A stretch of 64,000 nucleotides of DNA from positions 284,223-348,222 of the IMG/VR virus record IMGVR_UViG_3300023257_000007. The stretch is one strand, 5' to 3'. Of this stretch, positions 20,990 to 64,000 are shown in pieces. Numbering within the stretch: position 1 is the first letter of the stretch; every line of letters begins with the position of its first letter. A model generated the notes under the pieces. The model was not told where the DNA came from, searched no databases, and saw only the letters and a list, made by a program, of their open reading frames with translations. The position numbers and the translations under genes were made by a program.

Positions 20990-22186
20990 TTAATTTGAAC
21001 CAATAGTTATTAATTCTGGATGAACAGCACACCCTCTATCCCATTTAAATTCTGGGACTACTTTTTTTAATATATTATATGATGCGTTTAAATCAGCATT
21101 TATTAATATGTTTTCTTTACTTTTAAACATACCCCTTGAAACCCTTTTACCACAATATTCTTTATGTTTTTTTAATTCTTCACCATCAATAAAAGAACAT
21201 TTACTTGTGAAACTTTCTTCATTTAATTTAACATTCAAACCTTCTTTTAATGCTTTATATTCAATCATTTGAATTAATTTATAAAAAGGTATTTGAACAA
21301 AATTTTGATTATTCTTCTTACCCATATTTACATTTTGTTTCCAACTTTTATTATAACCAATAATTATTGTATTTAAATCATTTTTTAAACAAAAATCAAC
21401 CAAATATTTAGATGCATTATGTAAGTAATTATTTATTTTATTATTTCTTTTTTCAGTTAATAAATATAACCTTTTACTTATAAAAGTTTTCTTTGGTAAT
21501 TTTGATTGTAATTTAGACAACTTTTTATTATAATATTGATTAATTGATTTTAATGGTCTACCGTTAATGATTATAGGTTTTACAACCTTTTCATTTGAAG
21601 TTATAGCCATTAAATTATTTACACCTAAATCAACACTACAATATTTACTATTGTCTAACTTTAAAGGTTTTTCATCATATTTATATACTATATTTATTTT
21701 ATATTTTTTTGTTTTAAGTGGTTTTACCTGAACCTCAATTATTTTTTTACTTTTATTTTGAAATGGTAATTTAATACCTGTTTTATATAATTCTATATAA
21801 CCTTCCTTTTCAAGATTTTTAGTTTTTACAGCATTATCCACCAAAATGGCTGTAAATTTACTATTTTTAGGTAAATATTTAGGTAAATTTGGTTTACCAG
21901 TAAATCTATTTGGATTCTTTTTCCATTCTTTCATAGCGTTAAAAAAACTTTTCCAATTTGCATTAAGTATTCTTAGTGTTGGTCTAGCAATTCTAGATAA
22001 TAAATCTTTATATTCTACGTGATCTTTCATAATGGTATACATATCATATACTGTAATATAATTACCATGATTAATAAATTCCTGTCTGATAATGTAGTTA
22101 GCTTTATTGTAAAGATTTTTGGTTTTAACACAAATATCGTTTAAATTATTGTTATTTTTAATTATATGTGATTCAATTAAATACAA
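20990..22186 (-). mobile_element. tnpB: TnpB RNA-guided endonuclease (IS200/IS605-type, no TnpA nearby)
   Basis: RuvC I SVDLGVNN, EESFTSKCS, RuvC III INADLNASYNI; N-terminal KNLYN.ANY..RQ. Confidence 0.9.
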
Positions 22187-57833: not shown

Positions 57834-58376
57834 ATGATTAGAGGATTTGAAATTGTTTCTGATGAACACAGAAAACATGAAAATGTACAACTACCATTAA
57901 GGGGTAGTGAAGATTCAGCTGGATATGATTTTTATTCAAATGAAACACATATAATAGAACCAGGTGATCAAAAAGTTTTTTGGACTGATATCAAAGCTTA
58001 CATGCAAAAAGGTGAAGTTCTTAAAATATATGTTAGAAGTTCGATTGGTATTAAAAAAGGACTTAGATTAGCAAATCAAACTGGGGTAATTGATTGTGTT
58101 CCAAAAGGAACTAAAATTAAAATTAAAGATGGTGAAATAAATGTTGAAGATTTATTGGACAAAAAAAAAATTATTATATCTTATAATGAAGAAGAAGATG
58201 AAATAGAAGAAGATGAATTAAAAGAAATATGGATCGTAGATGATCTGGAATTATTAGAAATTGAGACAGAAGAAGGTGACTCAATTAAAATACCCTTTGA
58301 AAAAGAGGTATATACTGAAAGAGGATGGATTAAAGCAAAAAATCTAACTCTTGATGATAAAATATTAACATATTAA
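57834..58376 (+). CDS. dut: dUTPase N-terminal part (87 aa) fused to split intein N-fragment (93 aa)
   Basis: AGYD, RSS, GVID followed by intein block A CVPKGTKI (Cys1 at 58095) and TERGW.KA..L...D.I. Confidence 0.92.
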   Translation: MIRGFEIVSDEHRKHENVQLPLRGSEDSAGYDFYSNETHIIEPGDQKVFWTDIKAYMQKGEVLKIYVRSSIGIKKGLRLANQTGVIDCVPKGTKIKIKDGEINVEDLLDKKKIIISYNEEEDEIEEDELKEIWIVDDLELLEIETEEGDSIKIPFEKEVYTERGWIKAKNLTLDDKILTY

Positions 58377-58640
58377 ATGGAAAACAAAAAATTAAATAAT
58401 CTAACAAATGCAGCTAATGATTATAATAAAGGTTTAAACGATTGTGCAATAGTCGATATTAATTCAAATTTAGATTTAATTGAAAAAATTGAATTAGATA
58501 AAAGTATTAAAGAATCTTTAATACATGCACACAAAAGATTAATAGACATTTTAAATGGTGAAATAGACTTGAATGAAGAAGATTATTTGATCTATATTTC
58601 ATATATACAAGAAATAATTGCAGATTATAGATTAAATTAA
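58377..58640 (+). CDS. hypothetical helical protein inside the fractured dut locus
   Basis: 87-aa ORF starting directly after the IntN stop. Confidence 0.7.
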   Translation: MENKKLNNLTNAANDYNKGLNDCAIVDINSNLDLIEKIELDKSIKESLIHAHKRLIDILNGEIDLNEEDYLIYISYIQEIIADYRLN

Positions 58641-58701
58641 AAAATTAACATAATTCCAGTATTAATGTTTAATATATATTATTAAATAAATAATTTTAAC
58701 G

Positions 58702-59748
58702 ATGGAAATATTATGTAAAAATTGTGGTAAATCTTTTAAAGTTGCCAACTGGCAAATTAAAAAAGGAACAAAATATTGTTCTCATGAGTGTTATTGGGAA
58801 GATAAAAGAGGCGGTAAGAAAAAAGAAGAAAAGGTATGTATAGAATGTGGTGAGAAATTCTTACAAGAAACTTGGGAAAGTAAAAGAAAATTTTGTTCTC
58901 ATGAATGTTACTGGAAAAATAAAAAAAAACTAAAAGATATTGATTGTTTGAATTGTGGTAAAACATTTGAGCCATATAATTTAAAAACAAAATTTTGTTC
59001 TAAAAAATGTTCAGGTGAATATATAAGAAAACAAAACAATAAAATCTGTATTCAATGTGGAAAAGAATATCATCCATTAATTAAAACTTCTCAATATTGT
59101 AGTAGAGAATGTTATTGGAATTATAGAAGAGAAAACAAAGGTGTAATAATACAAACGAATCAAGGTGATTTTAGAACAAAATTAATATGTAATAATTGTG
59201 GAAAAGAATATTTAGAACATAAATATAGATTAAAAGTTTCTAAGTTTTGCTCAATGAAATGTCATTTTGAATCTAAGAGATTAAAGAAAAAATGTCCAAC
59301 ATGTGAAAAATATTTTGAAGTTCCAAATCACTTAGCACATCGAATTTTTTGTAGTAAAGATTGTGTAGATTTTACAAATAAATCTAAAAAAGAAAATGAC
59401 TTTTATAAATTTGTTAACAACATAATAAATGTAGAACAAAATAAAAAGGTTATATATGACAAAGTTTATTTTCCAGATTTAATGAATGAAGAAAACAAAA
59501 TAATAATTGAATTTTTTGGCGATTATTGGCATTGCAATCCTAATTTCTATGAAGATGAATATTATAATTCAAAAACAAGAAAACATGCACACGAAATGTG
59601 GAGCGATGATCAATTAAGATTAGAAAAATTAGAAGGATTAGGATATGATGTTAATATTATTTGGGAAAATGAATGGGAAACTGATTTAGAATTAGTTAAA
59701 ACAAAAATATTAAAAATAAAAGATAAATATGAAATACGTAAAAATTAA
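58702..59748 (+). CDS. free-standing homing endonuclease (CxxC...[F/Y]CSxxC repeats plus Vsr-like domain)
   Basis: About six Zn-finger repeats; PDL...IIEFFGDYWH...D..R...LGY....WE. Confidence 0.85.
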   Translation: MEILCKNCGKSFKVANWQIKKGTKYCSHECYWEDKRGGKKKEEKVCIECGEKFLQETWESKRKFCSHECYWKNKKKLKDIDCLNCGKTFEPYNLKTKFCSKKCSGEYIRKQNNKICIQCGKEYHPLIKTSQYCSRECYWNYRRENKGVIIQTNQGDFRTKLICNNCGKEYLEHKYRLKVSKFCSMKCHFESKRLKKKCPTCEKYFEVPNHLAHRIFCSKDCVDFTNKSKKENDFYKFVNNIINVEQNKKVIYDKVYFPDLMNEENKIIIEFFGDYWHCNPNFYEDEYYNSKTRKHAHEMWSDDQLRLEKLEGLGYDVNIIWENEWETDLELVKTKILKIKDKYEIRKN

Positions 59749-60028
59749 AAGAATAGAAAAATGTGAATCAGAACCGATTTATCATTTAACAATTAAAAAT
59801 AATCACAATTTTTTTGGTAATAATTTATTGTTACACAACTGCGATTATTTTGGAAATTCCAAAAATGACGGAAATATTGGTGCTTGTTTATGGAACCCAA
59901 CAAACGAACCAATTACTATTAAAAAAGGTGAAAGAATAGTTCAAGGTATATTTGAATTGTTCTTAGAATCTGATAACTGTAACACCAAAAAAGAAAGAGA
60001 CGGTGGAATCGGTTCAACAAATAAATAA
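59729..60028 (+). CDS. dut: split intein C-fragment (37 aa) fused to dUTPase C-terminal part (62 aa)
   Basis: ...HNFFGNNLLLHN|CDY, then KGERIVQGIF and R.GG.GST (dUTPase motifs 4 and 5). Confidence 0.92.
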   Translation: MKYVKIKRIEKCESEPIYHLTIKNNHNFFGNNLLLHNCDYFGNSKNDGNIGACLWNPTNEPITIKKGERIVQGIFELFLESDNCNTKKERDGGIGSTNK

Positions 60029-61363: not shown

Positions 61364-61759
61364 ATGAAAAAACAAGAAATTCCACTTCAGTTGAAGATAC
61401 AAGTACCAAAACCTGAAGGTTTAAACAAAAAACAATTAAAAAAACAATTACAAGAACTACAATTTGAATATGATTCTCTTTTTGATAAATTTTACACTAA
61501 AATAGAGATTATATTCACATATTCAAAAGATAATTATTGCCATTTTGAAAAATTAGAGATTGATGAAAATATATTTGCATTTTTAATAAATGTTAAAGAT
61601 ATAACTAGACAACAAGCAGAACAACGATGTTGGGAAGTAATGAAGAATTATGAAAAATATGATGATTGTTTAATAATTTGGTTGCCATCTGTTATAGAAG
61701 AAGACAAAATTGTAAAACTTACAAACACCACAAAAAATATAGAACTATGTCATGATTAA
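61364..61759 (+). CDS. hypothetical protein
   Basis: 131-aa ORF overlapping the next gene. Confidence 0.7.
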   Translation: MKKQEIPLQLKIQVPKPEGLNKKQLKKQLQELQFEYDSLFDKFYTKIEIIFTYSKDNYCHFEKLEIDENIFAFLINVKDITRQQAEQRCWEVMKNYEKYDDCLIIWLPSVIEEDKIVKLTNTTKNIELCHD

Positions 61760-62651
61760 GAAAATAAAAGCAGTGACTAAAGATTATGTAAAAGAACATA
61801 AAGATCTTTATGATAAAGGTTTACCTAATAAATATATGGAATTATTCCATCAAAAAATTGAAGGTGTTAGAAAGGCAAAAATTGTGTATGGTTTTAGTCA
61901 AGCTGAAATGATTGAATATAGTAAATGTCAAAATGATATAATATATTTTATTGAAAAATATTGTTCAATATTAACACCTGATGGTATTGTTAAACCTAGA
62001 TTATATGATTATCAAAAAACAATGTTAGAAAATTATACAAATAACAGATTTAGCTTAAATATGATAAGTAGACAGATGGGTATTTCAAATATCATTGCAT
62101 GGTTTACTTTACATATGTTAACTTTCAATGAAAGCAAAAATGCAATATTCATGGATATAAAATCAGGGTACTGTAAAAGTTTATTAGAAAAAGTTAAAAC
62201 ATCATATAAAATGTTACCTTTCTTTCTTCAAAAAGGTGTCATAACATGGAACCAAAGATCTATAGTTTTAGAAGATTATAGTCGTATTACTACACAATCC
62301 TATTCTAAAGAACCGGTGATTAGCTCTGATATTCACTTATTATATATGGATAATTACTCTAGAACTACAACATCAGAAACATCATACAAATATTTATTAC
62401 CAACAATCACATCTACAAATGATTCTAGAATAATAATATCAGGTAAACCTAAAGGTTTTAACCACTTTATTAAACTACTTCATAATAGTGAATTACCTTC
62501 AAACCATCCAGACAAAAATATATTTGAATCTTTAAGAGTATATTGGTGGCAACATCCAAATAAAAATGAAGAATGGAAGAAACAGGAAATAGAAAATATT
62601 GGTCAACAAATGTTTGATCAAGAGTATGATTTAAAATTTACAAATAAATAG
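61752..62651 (+). CDS. T4 gp17-like terminase ATPase-domain paralog, catalytically degenerate, no nuclease domain
   Basis: KC..D..YFIE.YC, LYDYQ, SRQMGIS, LLYMDN, W.QHP...W, F.QEY...F. Confidence 0.75.
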   Translation: MIKKIKAVTKDYVKEHKDLYDKGLPNKYMELFHQKIEGVRKAKIVYGFSQAEMIEYSKCQNDIIYFIEKYCSILTPDGIVKPRLYDYQKTMLENYTNNRFSLNMISRQMGISNIIAWFTLHMLTFNESKNAIFMDIKSGYCKSLLEKVKTSYKMLPFFLQKGVITWNQRSIVLEDYSRITTQSYSKEPVISSDIHLLYMDNYSRTTTSETSYKYLLPTITSTNDSRIIISGKPKGFNHFIKLLHNSELPSNHPDKNIFESLRVYWWQHPNKNEEWKKQEIENIGQQMFDQEYDLKFTNK

Positions 62652-62678
62652 TAAAATAATAAATCAATATATAGTTAA

Positions 62679-62962
62679 ATGAACTACACATTAGCTAAAG
62701 ACTAATGTGTTTCAGGTTTCATAGACTCATCTAATGACAACGCCTCCACCTGTTTTTGTTTAATGTCCGACTCAATCCCTGAACCAGACAATATTTTTAA
62801 TCCTTGTTTTAATATGTTTTTAGCTGCATTAAAATCTCTATCATGATTGGTTTCACATGATGGACAAGTCCATTCTCTATCTTTTAATGTTAAATTTTGG
62901 TTTATCCAACCACAATTAGAACACATTTTACTTGATGGAAAAAATCTATCAATTTTTACATA
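62679..62962 (-). mobile_element. tnpB: IS200/IS605 remnant: TnpB C-terminal fragment plus intact right end
   Basis: [17 protein letters not shown]...WTCPSC...[11 protein letters not shown]; hairpin acacattag/ctaatgtgt (62686-62710) ending GTAGTTCAT. Confidence 0.8.
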
Positions 62963-63254
62963 TTGACTCGTATCCTCGTATTTTTCTTAACGTGAAGCGA
63001 GGTTGCTCATTGCATCCGAACGCTCGGTGACACTGCGGTTCAAAATAAAAATTATTCGTCTTTATCTTCTTTAGTAATATATTCTGAAACTTCATTCAGC
63101 CATTTGGCAAAATTCTTTTGTCTAATAAACATTATTACTAAAAGTATTGTCATTACGACATCTACATAAGATACTGAATTTTCAAACATGGTTTAAATTT
63201 TTATTTATTGATTAATACTACTAAATTACATTTTTGTCTACTCGATACGAAAAA

Positions 63255-63517
63255 GCATCGAACAGTGTGTATAACAAATGAACCTTGTGATGACAGATTC
63301 AACTCTCAGTCTTTAATTTTTAATTCTTTTCTTCTTTTTACTTCTTCATCCTTTTTGTGCCAAACTAAAAAATCTGTAAATTTATCCATTTGTTCTTTGT
63401 CTAATAAACATTCAAACGTTACTTGTAATTTCTTCCTCTCTTTCATGATTCCTATATATTTAAGCTAAAATTAAATTCTTTCGTTTCACTTGTCATACAC
63501 ACCGAGCGTTATGCAAC
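63255..63517 (+). mobile_element. attC-like site with a long loop containing a 46-aa ORF (63306-63446, minus strand)
   Basis: gcatcgAAC a gtgtgtataacaaatgaa ... ttcacttgtcatacacac cgagc GTTatgc; arms 16/18 complementary. Confidence 0.55.
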
Positions 63518-63814
63518 ATTTACTGCATCATAACTCTTGTTTGCTTCTCTTTTACGTTCCTTACTTAGTGTCCATCCATTTTCTGTCATAAACTCAATAT
63601 CGCCATTATAAAGCTGTTCTTCTGTGCATTCAATAAGCATCCATCTGTATCTATCATTTGTTCGTTTCTGGAAGCTGTGCACTCCTTTGTAATGGCTAAA
63701 CCATTTATATCCATTAAATACCATTCCTATATATTTTTCTGTATCAAAACGTTGCATAACAACACCTATATTTAATGCCTCGTTTTGTGGTAATTTATCA
63801 GTTTCTTTTTTCAT
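63509..63814 (-). CDS. cassette-borne hypothetical protein
   Basis: Start lies inside the loop of the next site; TAA overlaps the GTTA core at 63508. Confidence 0.75.
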   Translation of the reverse strand: MKKETDKLPQNEALNIGVVMQRFDTEKYIGMVFNGYKWFSHYKGVHSFQKRTNDRYRWMLIECTEEQLYNGDIEFMTENGWTLSKERKREANKSYDAVNVA

Positions 63815-63886
63815 TTCTAAAGTATTTAAGTTTATAAAATTTCGTGTATTTGTTCGGCACTAAACATAGCCCAACGTTACCTGCAA
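63751..63886 (+). mobile_element. attC-like site (about 130 bp)
   Basis: gttgcatAAC aacac ctatatttaatgcc ... ggcactaaacatag cccaac GTTacct; arms 12/14 complementary. Confidence 0.65.
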
Positions 63887-64000
63887 TGCCTCTCCACACT
63901 TGCGATAGTGTCGTGAATAGCCCCGCCATGTGAGAATAGTGCAATTCGCTCAACTGCAAAGCCTCTATTTTTACCCATCGTGTTGCTATGGTAGCCGAAT
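63877..64000 (-). CDS. 3' end of a gene, probably of a phage methyltransferase-like family (partial)
   Basis: ...FGYHSNTMGKNRGFAVERIALFSHGGAIHDTIASVERHCR*; stop overlaps GTTA at 63876. Confidence 0.5.
   Translation of the reverse strand, partial: FGYHSNTMGKNRGFAVERIALFSHGGAIHDTIASVERHCR

What the first reader, a model, noticed from the sequence alone, without database searches (positions are those of the whole stretch)
63010..64000. Integron-like cassette array with reverse-oriented genes that start inside the attC-like loop
Seen: two imperfect hairpin sites with AAC...GTT cores (63255-63517, 63751-63886). The cassette between them starts GTTATGCAAC (63508) and its own site starts GTTGCATAAC (63751), an exact reverse complement, as expected for an excisable cassette. 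Two successive minus-strand genes stop on the GTTA core. One starts within the loop, so its N-terminus (EALNIGVVMQR) is encoded by a hairpin arm. The first site encloses a whole 46-aa ORF. An inverted half-site sharing caccgagcgtt lies at 63011-63040. Established: attC sites have RYYYAAC/GTTRRRY cores and recombine as folded single strands. Inference: a phage-borne cassette system with atypical architecture. No integrase is in this window and the cores deviate from the strict consensus.
Basis: partly seen in the sequence, partly recalled or inferred. Interest (0 to 1): 0.7.

Follow-up and report, generated by a model that had tools for sequence, protein, structure and literature searches.

The report
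Integron-style gene cassettes in jumbo phage
The end of this giant-phage contig carries small genes packaged as integron-type cassettes, each bounded by a folded attC-like recombination site, and identical cassettes sit in unrelated phages of the same lakes with the identity stopping exactly at the expected crossover base, so viruses there appear to trade single genes by site-specific recombination.

Summary
Window 63.0-64.0 kb is the start of an integrase-less attC cluster (a CALIN) in a jumbo phage contig of at least 348 kb.

- **Sites.** A covariance model built from other phages and Bacteroidota genomes finds a full site at 63752-63885(-), E about 1e-5. A second site, 63255-63514, has 18-nt arms around a 46-aa ORF.
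- **Cassettes.** The 101-aa cassette (63509-63876) and the DNA methyltransferase cassette (63877 onward) recur at 99-100% identity in other phage contigs. They have 3-5 different neighbours on each side, and identity breaks inside TAAC|G (top strand G|TT).
- **Circle signature.** Each cassette's last bases are the reverse complement of its own inner core box.
- **Bacterial counterpart.** The same site family forms arrays in Bacteroidota chromosomes, some beside an IntI/XerA-like tyrosine recombinase.
- **Orientation.** Phage ORFs are antisense to the bacterial orientation and start inside the attC loop.
- **Recombinase.** None is found in 348 kb, so it is presumably supplied by the host. This is inferred.

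Phage CALINs, including this site family in Polaribacter phage P12002L, were published in 2023. This is therefore a new variant, with natural evidence of exchange.

The parts
63877..64000 (-). 3' part of the DNA methyltransferase cassette. The ORF is 180 aa with a DPPY motif and runs to window-equivalent 64419 in the sister contig G000. The cassette's own attC 3' half lies in codons 12-19 and its 5' half is cut by the contig end.
   Evidence: ORF and translation. phrog_11619 DNA methyltransferase, E 3e-42. 100% nt identity over 64462..63874 in at least 5 other contexts. R1 hit on the same cassette at L007 9931-10056.
63876..63877 (+). Crossover point 1: top-strand G|TT of R' GTTACCT, which reads TAAC|G on the gene strand. 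It is the junction of the methyltransferase and 101-aa cassettes.
   Evidence: Identity with L007, L009, L012, L014, L015 and L016 ends at 63873-63876. Unitig loose ends at this base show the other contexts in the same samples.
63752..63885 (-). attC-like site alpha. On the gene strand it comprises the box TAACG, arm GGCTATGTTT, a loop of about 99 nt, arm AAATATAGGT and the box TGTTATGC. The loop holds the 5' leader, the ATG and the first 16 codons of the 101-aa ORF.
   Evidence: R1 33.2 bits, E 3.3e-5 / 9.3e-6, full model, all pairs standard. The minimum-energy DNA fold adopts this hairpin.
63509..63876 (-). The 101-aa cassette, 368 nt, with its ORF at 63509-63814. Its first top-strand bases TTATGC complete R' GTTATGC, which is the exact complement of its own R'' GCATAAC (63754-63760).
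   Evidence: 99.2-100% identical in L018-L021, with 3 different upstream and 4 different downstream neighbours. Own-end complementarity is 10 of 11 (and direct reading).
63508..63509 (+). Crossover point 2: top-strand G|TT of R' GTTATGC.
   Evidence: Identity with L018, L019 and L020 ends at 63507/63508.
63255..63514 (-). attC-like site beta with a 202-nt loop. On the top strand it comprises R'' GCATCGAAC (63255-63263), arms 63265-63282 and 63485-63502, and R' GTTATGC (63508-63514).
   Evidence: Inverted repeat I2. The boxes were read. The minimum-energy DNA fold pairs these arms. R1 does not detect it because the loop is too long.
63306..63446 (-). 46-aa ORF lying wholly inside the loop of site beta.
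   Evidence: It is found only in the jumbo-phage context. No Pfam or PHROG family.
63052..63189 (-). 45-aa ORF with a hydrophobic stretch, lying between site beta and the inverted half-site.
   Evidence: It is found only in the jumbo-phage context.
63010..63029 (+). Inverted partial site TTGCATCCGAACG|CTCGGTG. It is the same box and arm start as site beta, but on the other strand.
   Evidence: Inverted repeat I20. The 11-mer occurs only at these two places in 88 kb.
62987..62992 (+). TTAACG box at the point where the TnpB reading frame is cut off. This is a possible secondary-site junction.
   Evidence: The TAA of this box closes the TnpB-like frame [20 protein letters not shown]...
62702..62986 (-). 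C-terminal remnant of a TnpB gene (zinc-ribbon TNB domain) with its right-end hairpin at 62679-62713. It is the left neighbour of the array.
   Evidence: Pfam PF07282, E 1e-11. Homology to the full-length TnpB of the same phage starts at 62954. Full copies exist elsewhere in the phage.

Best explanation
The stretch is a CALIN-type integron cassette array, meaning attC sites and cassettes without an integrase, carried by a jumbo phage that probably infects Bacteroidota.

Anatomy. Read on the + strand, which is the attC top strand, each cassette is TT(R' rest) - antisense ORF - R''(..AAC) - L'' - loop - L' - G. The sense strand of the genes (the window's minus strand) is the attC bottom strand, the one that folds. 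It carries two conserved G.T pairs and the longer 5' spacer, and it reads TAACG...TGTTA.

Mechanism. A tyrosine recombinase of the IntI/Xer clade, supplied in trans by the host, would bind the folded site. It would cut between A and C of the 5' AAC box, which is top-strand G|TT. It would excise a cassette as a circle and insert it at another attC, or at a secondary GTT, in whatever DNA is present. That includes co-infecting phages.

Expression. Phage cassettes cannot rely on an integron Pc promoter. Their ORFs are turned round and begin inside the attC loop, which must then carry their expression signals.

Cargo. One cassette carries an orphan DNA methyltransferase, probably for anti-restriction. 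The others carry small proteins of unknown function.

Shown: the site family and its structure, the crossover position, the circle signature, the shared cassettes and the orientation contrast.

Inferred: the enzyme, the single-strand folding in vivo, promoters in the loops and the direction of transfer.
For: (a) Independent model. R1 was built from 60 sites of other phages and Bacteroidota genomes (A1). 94.9% of cells are paired against 80.1% in shuffles, and 7 of the 10 L-stem pairs change on both sides. It finds the window site at E about 1e-5.

(b) Breakpoints. The methyltransferase cassette is 100% identical in contigs with 4 different upstream and 5 different downstream neighbours. The 101-aa cassette has 3 upstream and 4 downstream neighbours. 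Every break lies inside [T]AAC(G). In the census about 20 junction contexts fall at the box and about 4 elsewhere.

(c) Circle signature. Over 25 cassettes, the 3' box of a site matches the reverse complement of its own cassette end at 7.96 of 11 positions. The neighbour's end gives 5.8, and shuffles give 6.02 +/- 0.25 with a maximum of 6.96 in 2000.

(d) Distribution. The core pattern gives 106 hits in GTDB species genomes against about 4 expected (my estimate), almost all Bacteroidota, often in strand-biased arrays such as 9:0 and 7:0.

(e) Recombinase. The best TIGR02249-like recombinase of the genome lies 2-5 kb from the array locus in Algoriphagus and Eudoraea. Homologues lie inside 6 further array loci.

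(f) Orientation. ORFs on both flanks are sense to TAACG->TGTTA at 17 phage sites against 2 antisense. In bacteria the counts are 10 sense against 42 antisense.

(g) Not chimeric. Unitig depth is the same on the array and on the backbone in three runs (25.1/27.9, 17.3/16, 11/11.3). The methyltransferase cassette is deeper (55, 40, 48; in X4 400 against 4). The same arrangement appears in at least 6 long and several short contigs from different samples, and in a strain 0.6% diverged.

(h) Composition. GC is 0.38-0.40 in the two shared cassettes and about 0.25 in the backbone.

(i) Published link. P12002L_attC1 of Qi et al. 2023 is a member of this site family.
Against: - No tyrosine recombinase (PF00589) was found in 348 kb of the jumbo phage or in five other element-bearing phage records, one of them a complete 79.9-kb genome.
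- The recombinase beside the bacterial arrays scores below the integron-integrase cut-off (214 against 265 bits). It lacks model positions 177-238, the region I recall as the IntI-specific patch.
- P12002L_attC1, of this family, was the one phage site that IntI1 did not recombine (PMC9892861).
- The window sites have loops of about 99 and 202 nt, and their fold energies are no better than shuffles.
- The conserved G.T pairs would suit a sense-strand RNA structure equally well.
- One breakpoint, at 63756, lies in the other box.
- No presence/absence polymorphism was seen within the jumbo-phage population.
- The training sites for R1 were picked by a hairpin filter of my own, so the covariation counts are partly circular.
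Confidence: 0.72

Rival explanations
1. The hairpins are regulatory elements of the phage early region, such as terminators, processing sites or 5' leaders on the sense transcript. Genes would then be shuffled by the phages' own general recombination (ERF/RecT-type annealing with a YqaJ exonuclease) at short conserved motifs, as proposed for promoter-stem-loop cassettes of T4-type phages.
For: - The conserved G.U-compatible pairs lie on the sense strand.
- The loops hold the leader and the start codon.
- The small phages carry YqaJ and ERF genes.
- No integrase is found in any phage record.
- A few breakpoints lie at start codons, where leaders are shared.
- IntI1 did not use P12002L_attC1.
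Against: - About 20 junctions fall within a 5-nt box that has no flanking homology, which is too short for annealing-type recombination.
- The cassette end is complementary to the cassette's own distal box across 300-900 nt.
- The same sites form arrays beside tyrosine recombinases in bacterial chromosomes, where the ORFs are antisense to the structure.
Confidence: 0.15
2. The modules are passengers of single-strand (IS200/IS605-type) transposition. A Y1 transposase would recognise the hairpins and insert 3' of a TAACG target, and the neighbouring TnpB remnant would be a trace of this.
For: - A TnpB remnant abuts the array, and full TnpB genes occur in the same phage.
- Insertion next to a fixed pentanucleotide without duplication resembles IS608-type behaviour (my own knowledge).
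Against: - No Y1 transposase (PF01797) is present in 348 kb.
- Each module has one hairpin, not distinct left-end and right-end hairpins.
- The TnpB-free small phages show the same mosaicism.
- The bacterial arrays sit beside tyrosine recombinases of the Xer/IntI clade, not HUH enzymes.
Confidence: 0.05
3. The array is an assembly artefact: a jumbo-phage contig wrongly joined, through the TnpB repeat or the shared methyltransferase gene, to DNA of other phages.
For: - All jumbo contigs stop inside or just upstream of the methyltransferase cassette.
- The TnpB right end is a repeat with higher depth.
- One 838-nt contig, L273, has another flank after the TnpB end.
Against: - Depth is equal on the backbone and on 62897-63790 in three runs whose absolute depths differ.
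- The 45-aa and 46-aa genes occur only in this context.
- The same order is found by two assemblers in many samples and in a 0.6%-diverged strain that reaches 64022.
- In run X1 a unitig spans the 63874 junction.
Confidence: 0.04

Closest known systems
CALINs (clusters of attC sites lacking an integron-integrase) in phage genomes, Qi et al. 2023, Front Microbiol (PMC9892861), notably Polaribacter phage P12002L
   Same: - attC-type sites without an integrase in a virulent phage.
- DNA methyltransferases as cargo.
- Their P12002L_attC1 (TGCTAACGGCTACGGCTAAACGG...TTAGCCATTGTTAGGC) belongs to the same site family.
- They also report sites in divergent directions.
   Different: - The carrier here is a jumbo phage of at least 348 kb.
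- The sites have very long loops that contain gene starts or a whole gene.
- The ORFs are systematically antisense to the bacterial cassette orientation.
- Natural cassette exchange between unrelated phages is documented at base resolution, which that study did not show.
- Their assay used IntI1 and failed for the site of this family.
Classical integron gene cassettes and attC sites (class 1 and Vibrio chromosomal integrons; IntI-mediated recombination of folded bottom strands)
   Same: - R''/L''/loop/L'/R' architecture with AAC/GTT cores.
- An asymmetric internal loop and occasional extra bases.
- Crossover at G|TT of R'.
- The first bases of a cassette complement its own R''.
- Arrays are strand-biased.
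   Different: - No intI, attI or Pc in the phage.
- The cores deviate from RYYYAAC/GTTRRRY (GTTACCT, GTTATGC).
- The site lengths of 134 and about 260 nt are at or beyond the usual 57-141 nt.
- The genes are antisense and overlap the site.
- The candidate recombinase of the bacterial arrays lacks the stretch I recall as IntI-specific.
Promoter-early stem-loop (PeSL) cassettes of T4-type phages (Arbiol et al. 2010; recalled from memory, not read here)
   Same: - Small accessory ORFs in a hyperplastic region of a large phage.
- Each ORF is flanked by a conserved stem-loop motif.
- The ORFs are shuffled between phages.
   Different: - PeSL exchange is thought to be homologous recombination between about 50-nt repeats.
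- Here the shared core is 5 nt.
- The hairpin sequences differ between cassettes.
- The family is shared with bacterial recombinase-linked arrays.
Cassette insertion at secondary GTT sites ('attG'), bioRxiv 10.1101/2022.09.11.507474
   Same: It would explain how cassettes enter a genome that has no attI. The array's left end coincides with a (C)GTTAA box that truncates a TnpB frame.
   Different: Only the abstract was seen. The empty site is not available, so the insertion is not demonstrated.

Membership tests
attC recombination site | Imperfect inverted repeat with outer R''(..AAC)/R'(GTT..) cores and inner L''/L' arms around a variable loop | tested here: met
   Family alignment A1 and model R1. 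Window site alpha matches the full model with 15 of 15 standard pairs. Site beta was read by hand.
attC recombination site | Cores fit RYYYAAC / GTTRRRY | tested here: inconclusive
   AAC/GTT are invariant in the family. In the window R' is GTTACCT or GTTATGC and R'' is GCATAAC or GCATCGAAC, so each departs from the strict consensus at 1-2 positions.
attC recombination site | Length about 57-141 nt | tested here: not met
   Site alpha is 134 nt, at the upper limit. Site beta is about 260 nt with a 202-nt loop. The compact relatives are 57-80 nt.
attC recombination site | Strand-specific folding features (extrahelical bases, asymmetric spacer) | tested here: inconclusive
   The spacer is 4 nt on one side and 2 nt on the other. 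G.T pairs are conserved at 60 of 60 and 53 of 60 sequences, and some members have an extra G in the 3' arm. Equivalence to T12''/G20'' was not established.
attC recombination site | Recombined by an integron integrase | not testable with these tools
   Published assay: a family member (P12002L_attC1) was not recombined by IntI1, whereas five other phage sites were.
Integron gene cassette | Cassette boundaries at G|TT of R', and the same cassette found with different neighbours | tested here: met
   The breaks lie at 63876|63877 and 63508|63509.
Integron gene cassette | The circularised cassette restores a site whose R' complements its R'' | tested here: met
   7.96 of 11 matches against 6.02 +/- 0.25 in shuffles. 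The window's 101-aa cassette gives 10 of 11.
Integron gene cassette | ORF co-oriented with the attC top strand and usually promoterless | tested here: not met
   Phage ORFs lie on the strand that reads TAACG->TGTTA (17 against 2). In bacteria the counts are reversed (10 against 42).
Complete integron | intI gene with the IntI-specific domain, attI and Pc next to the array | tested here: not met
   No PF00589 hit in G000 or G001. The array therefore falls in the CALIN class.
CALIN | At least 2 attC sites within a few kb and no integrase nearby | tested here: met
   Sites alpha and beta lie in the window, and a third lies in the methyltransferase cassette just beyond it. No integrase is found in 348 kb.
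IS200/IS605 passenger element | Y1 transposase and distinct left-end and right-end hairpins | tested here: not met
   No PF01797 hit. Each module has one hairpin.

The most novel reading that the evidence does not exclude
Bacteroidota and their phages would share a distinct, largely unannotated integron-like system.

- Its recombinase would be a Xer/XerA-like enzyme without the IntI-specific domain.
- Its attC family would be conserved across families and even phyla.
- Phages would have adapted it into self-expressed 'inside-out' cassettes, with an antisense ORF starting in the attC loop.
- These cassettes would move in nature between unrelated phages, from 40-kb siphoviruses to a jumbo phage of at least 348 kb, carrying anti-restriction methyltransferases and other small genes.
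Probability: 0.4. Interest if true: 0.8.

Novelty: new variant of a known kind. Interest (0 to 1): 0.62.

Why it matters
- **A mechanism for phage mosaicism.** Phage genomes are mosaics, but the mechanism that cuts at gene boundaries is rarely visible. Here the cut is a defined 5-nt core of a folded site shared with bacterial integron-like arrays. Single-gene traffic between phages, and between phages and hosts, would then have a concrete and testable mechanism.
- **A gap in integron surveys.** IntegronFinder 2.0 reports almost no complete integrons in Bacteroidetes (PMC9024848). Arrays of this site family next to a recombinase were nevertheless easy to find here.
- **A link to phage defence.** The cargo, an orphan DNA methyltransferase, ties the system to the contest between phages and host defences.

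Tried and rejected
- **Rfam.** Nothing at gathering threshold in the window. Nothing relevant at E <= 1 in six loci.
- **First viral-contig pattern scan.** The pattern was too loose and most hits were chance. Only 6 loci proved to be real multi-site members.
- **R1 with filters off and through the genome search.** Both miss the long-loop sites. 'No other site in 348 kb' therefore holds only for compact sites.
- **Metagenome pattern scan for the methyltransferase cassette's 5' end.** It gave no contig that extends the jumbo phage beyond 64462. What follows, including the TerL C-terminal half and the TnpB 5' part, remains unknown.
- **Function of the small proteins.** Pfam and PHROGs give nothing for the 101-, 46- and 45-aa proteins. 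tblastn of the 101-aa protein finds no cultured phage.
- **Inversion hypothesis.** I considered that 63024-63506 was inverted between the two AACGCTCGGTG copies. The sequence is compatible with either orientation, so this is undecided.
- **Thermodynamic test of the hairpins.** It was not significant.

Full report
**Where the window lies**

The window is the last 64 kb of a 348,222-nt IMG/VR phage contig, G001. A sister record, G000 (88,478 nt), is identical over the 8.2 kb compared and runs 462 nt further, to window-equivalent 64462. The DNA is 25% G+C.

After a + strand gene for the N-terminal ATPase half of a T4-type large terminase (61752-62651, 299 aa), the strand of the genes flips. On the minus strand lie:
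- a TnpB C-terminal remnant (62702-62926);
- ORFs of 45, 46 and 101 aa;
- a 180-aa DNA methyltransferase that starts at 64419 in G000.

**Checking the observation**

Within 88 kb, the 11-mer AACGCTCGGTG and the 10-mer GTTGCATAAC occur only in this terminal kilobase, each once per strand. Both minus-strand genes end with the TAA of a TAACG box.

**The decisive comparison**

The exact 180-aa methyltransferase is encoded on contigs listed in 46 blocks of the assembly collection. Over window-equivalent 64462..63874 the DNA is 100% identical to small phage contigs of 32-35% G+C that carry YqaJ, ERF, DUF1064 and Dam genes. Beyond that stretch it is unrelated.

- Four different upstream contexts all diverge immediately 5' of TAACG.
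- Five downstream contexts diverge immediately after TAAC(G).
- A sixth combination of flanks appears in L265.
- The 101-aa module (63509-63876) behaves the same way, with three upstream and four downstream neighbours.
- In an all-against-all census of 23 phage loci, about 20 independent junction contexts fall in the box and about 4 elsewhere, the latter at start codons where leaders are shared.

**What the junction elements are**

Lined up, the intergenic elements share one architecture: [T/C]AACG - 4 nt - arm - variable loop - complementary arm - 2 nt - TGTTA. A 22-base pattern of this architecture gave 106 hits in one-genome-per-species GTDB contigs, where I estimate about 4 by chance. Nearly all are Bacteroidota, and many lie in strand-biased arrays.

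The sites look like attC sites, for example ..gcTAACG gtctg GTGCAGCC ... GGCTGCAC gtg GTTAGCA.

- In Algoriphagus yeomjeoni and Eudoraea chungangensis, the genome's best match to the integron-integrase model lies 2-5 kb from the array locus.
- Homologues of that protein lie inside six more array loci, from Chitinophagales to Sericytochromatia.
- The protein has PF13495 and PF00589 domains and passes NCBIfam NF040815 ('XerA/integron integrase', 224 against 220 bits).
- It stays below TIGR02249 (214 against 265 bits) and does not align to that model's positions 177-238. I recall this as the IntI-specific region, but I did not verify that.

**Model and window sites**

An alignment of 60 compact sites, none from the window's cassettes, supports 15 pairs. 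94.9% of cells are paired against 80.1% in shuffles, and 7 of the 10 inner-stem pairs change on both sides. The sites were chosen with a hairpin filter of mine, which inflates these numbers.

The resulting model R1 finds exactly one place in the 64-kb window: 63885->63752 on the minus strand, 33.2 bits, E 3.3e-5.
- Its loop of about 99 nt holds the leader, the ATG (63814) and 16 codons of the 101-aa ORF.
- The 3' arm and box encode ..NIGVVMQ.

The methyltransferase cassette is built the same way: its distal arm and box lie in codons 12-19 (L007 9931-10056).

R1 cannot span that loop. The minimum-energy DNA fold does pair the arms, but neither site folds better than shuffled sequence.

**Cassette logic**

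In an integron cassette, the bases after the crossover complement the cassette's own R''. This holds here.
- Methyltransferase cassette: GCAGGTAAC against GTTACCTGT.
- 101-aa cassette: TGTTGCATAAC against GTTATGCAACG.
- Over 25 cassettes the mean is 7.96 of 11 matches. The upstream neighbour's end gives 5.8, and shuffles give 6.02 +/- 0.25.

This test does not say which box is cut. The breakpoints do: the cut is at the TAACG box, and the hairpin travels with the ORF downstream of it.

**Polarity**

On the gene strand the cut box is 5' of the hairpin and reads AAC|G. That strand also carries the conserved G.T pairs and the longer spacer. By analogy with classical attC sites this is the bottom, recombinogenic strand. 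The attC_aadA7 comparison behind this analogy is from memory.

In bacterial arrays the flanking ORFs are mostly antisense to that strand (42 against 10), which is the canonical orientation. In phage arrays they are sense (17 against 2).

**Is the join real?**

- Logan unitigs of three salt-lake runs give the same depth for the backbone and for 62897-63790: 27.9/25.1, 16/17.3 and 11.3/11.
- The methyltransferase cassette is deeper, and in a fourth run about 100 times deeper than the jumbo phage.
- Loose ends at 63874 show the other contexts in the same samples.
- The order TerL-N, TnpB remnant, 45 aa, 46 aa, 101 aa, methyltransferase recurs in many assemblies and in a strain 0.6% diverged.
- G+C rises from about 0.25 to 0.38-0.40 in the two shared cassettes.

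**What is missing**

No tyrosine recombinase or Y1 transposase occurs in 348 kb. None occurs in five other phage records that carry the elements, one of them a complete 79.9-kb genome. The enzyme is therefore inferred to come from the host.

The left end is untidy. An inverted partial site lies at 63010-63029, and a + strand TTAACG lies at 62987-62992, whose TAA closes the TnpB frame. That position would fit insertion at a secondary GTT site, but no empty site is available for comparison.

**Literature**

Qi et al. 2023 (PMC9892861) reported integrons and 17 CALINs in phages, with methyltransferase cargo. They showed that IntI1 recombines five of six phage attC sites. Their P12002L_attC1, the one that failed, is a member of the present family. 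The IntegronFinder 2.0 paper found almost no complete integrons in Bacteroidetes.

The kind is therefore known. New here are:
- the jumbo-phage carrier;
- the gene-in-loop, antisense architecture;
- the base-precise natural exchange;
- the link to recombinase-associated arrays in Bacteroidota.

Noticed in passing
window 61752-62651: The large terminase is a 299-aa ORF with only the ATPase half. About half of its best 150 homologues are also 270-300 aa and end at the same point. Others are about 600 aa, or 700-1070 aa. No Terminase_6C match occurs in the 348-kb contig. The gene seems split at a recurrent position, and the TnpB remnant and the cassette array sit right after the split.
   Followed up: partly
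window 62679-62986; window about 21071-21286; G001 260025-260228: The phage carries full-length TnpB genes (422-aa and 389-aa frames) and one truncated copy next to the array. The 35-nt right-end hairpin 62679-62713 recurs at the start of G000. An 838-nt contig, L273, is colinear with 63339..62678 and then has a different flank exactly after that end.
   Followed up: partly
window about 57834-60028: A dUTPase appears to be interrupted. A 180-aa dUTPase ORF, a 348-aa ORF and a 99-aa ORF follow one another. The 99-aa ORF has weak intein-splicing and dUTPase hits and contains ...LLLHNC (gene table, ORF).
   Followed up: no
L154/L251 (Algoriphagus yeomjeoni), L249/L253 (Eudoraea chungangensis), L202, L185, L220, L190, L211, L170: Bacteroidota (and one Sericytochromatia) chromosomes hold arrays of this attC family. 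The arrays lie downstream of a 357-385-aa Xer/IntI-like recombinase that lacks TIGR02249 positions 177-238. Genes between the recombinase and the first site include a HEPN RiboL-PSP protein. Standard surveys report hardly any integrons in this phylum.
   Followed up: partly
L171, L175, L179, L196, L201, L215, L223, L240, L241: One site variant..TAACGGTTAAGGCTATGTGCCGTTTTAATGGCATATAGCCTGTGTTATCGGTT, is nearly identical in MAGs labelled Bacteroidales, Cyclobacteriaceae, Flavobacteriaceae, Cloacimonadota, Zixiibacteriota and WOR-1. A few loop types recur widely, such as CGTTTTAATG and GTGTCCCGAAGGGCAT. This is unusual for attC sites, whose loops are thought to be unconstrained.
   Followed up: no
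window 63756; L001 2657: Unitigs of higher depth (about 156 against 25 in run X1) share the 5' box, the loop and the first 19 codons of the 101-aa cassette, then continue differently from 63756. That position is inside the other core box (GTTAT|). The N-terminal 19 residues are thus shared by two different ORFs, and the 101-aa protein may really start at M20 (MQRFD...).
   Followed up: partly
L007 3175-3777 vs L009 1725-1916: Two different genes, of 207 aa (DUF7666) and 71 aa, occupy the same slot between a perfect 16-nt inverted repeat, GAGATAGTGTTAAATA / TATTTAACACTATCTC. The right-hand break lies at TAAC|A.
   Followed up: partly
L007 9887-9941; window 62988-63022: There are ORF-less 'mini-cassettes'. 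In L007, about 50 nt lie between two TAACG boxes. In the window, 30 nt lie between TAACG and GAACG on the + strand.
   Followed up: no
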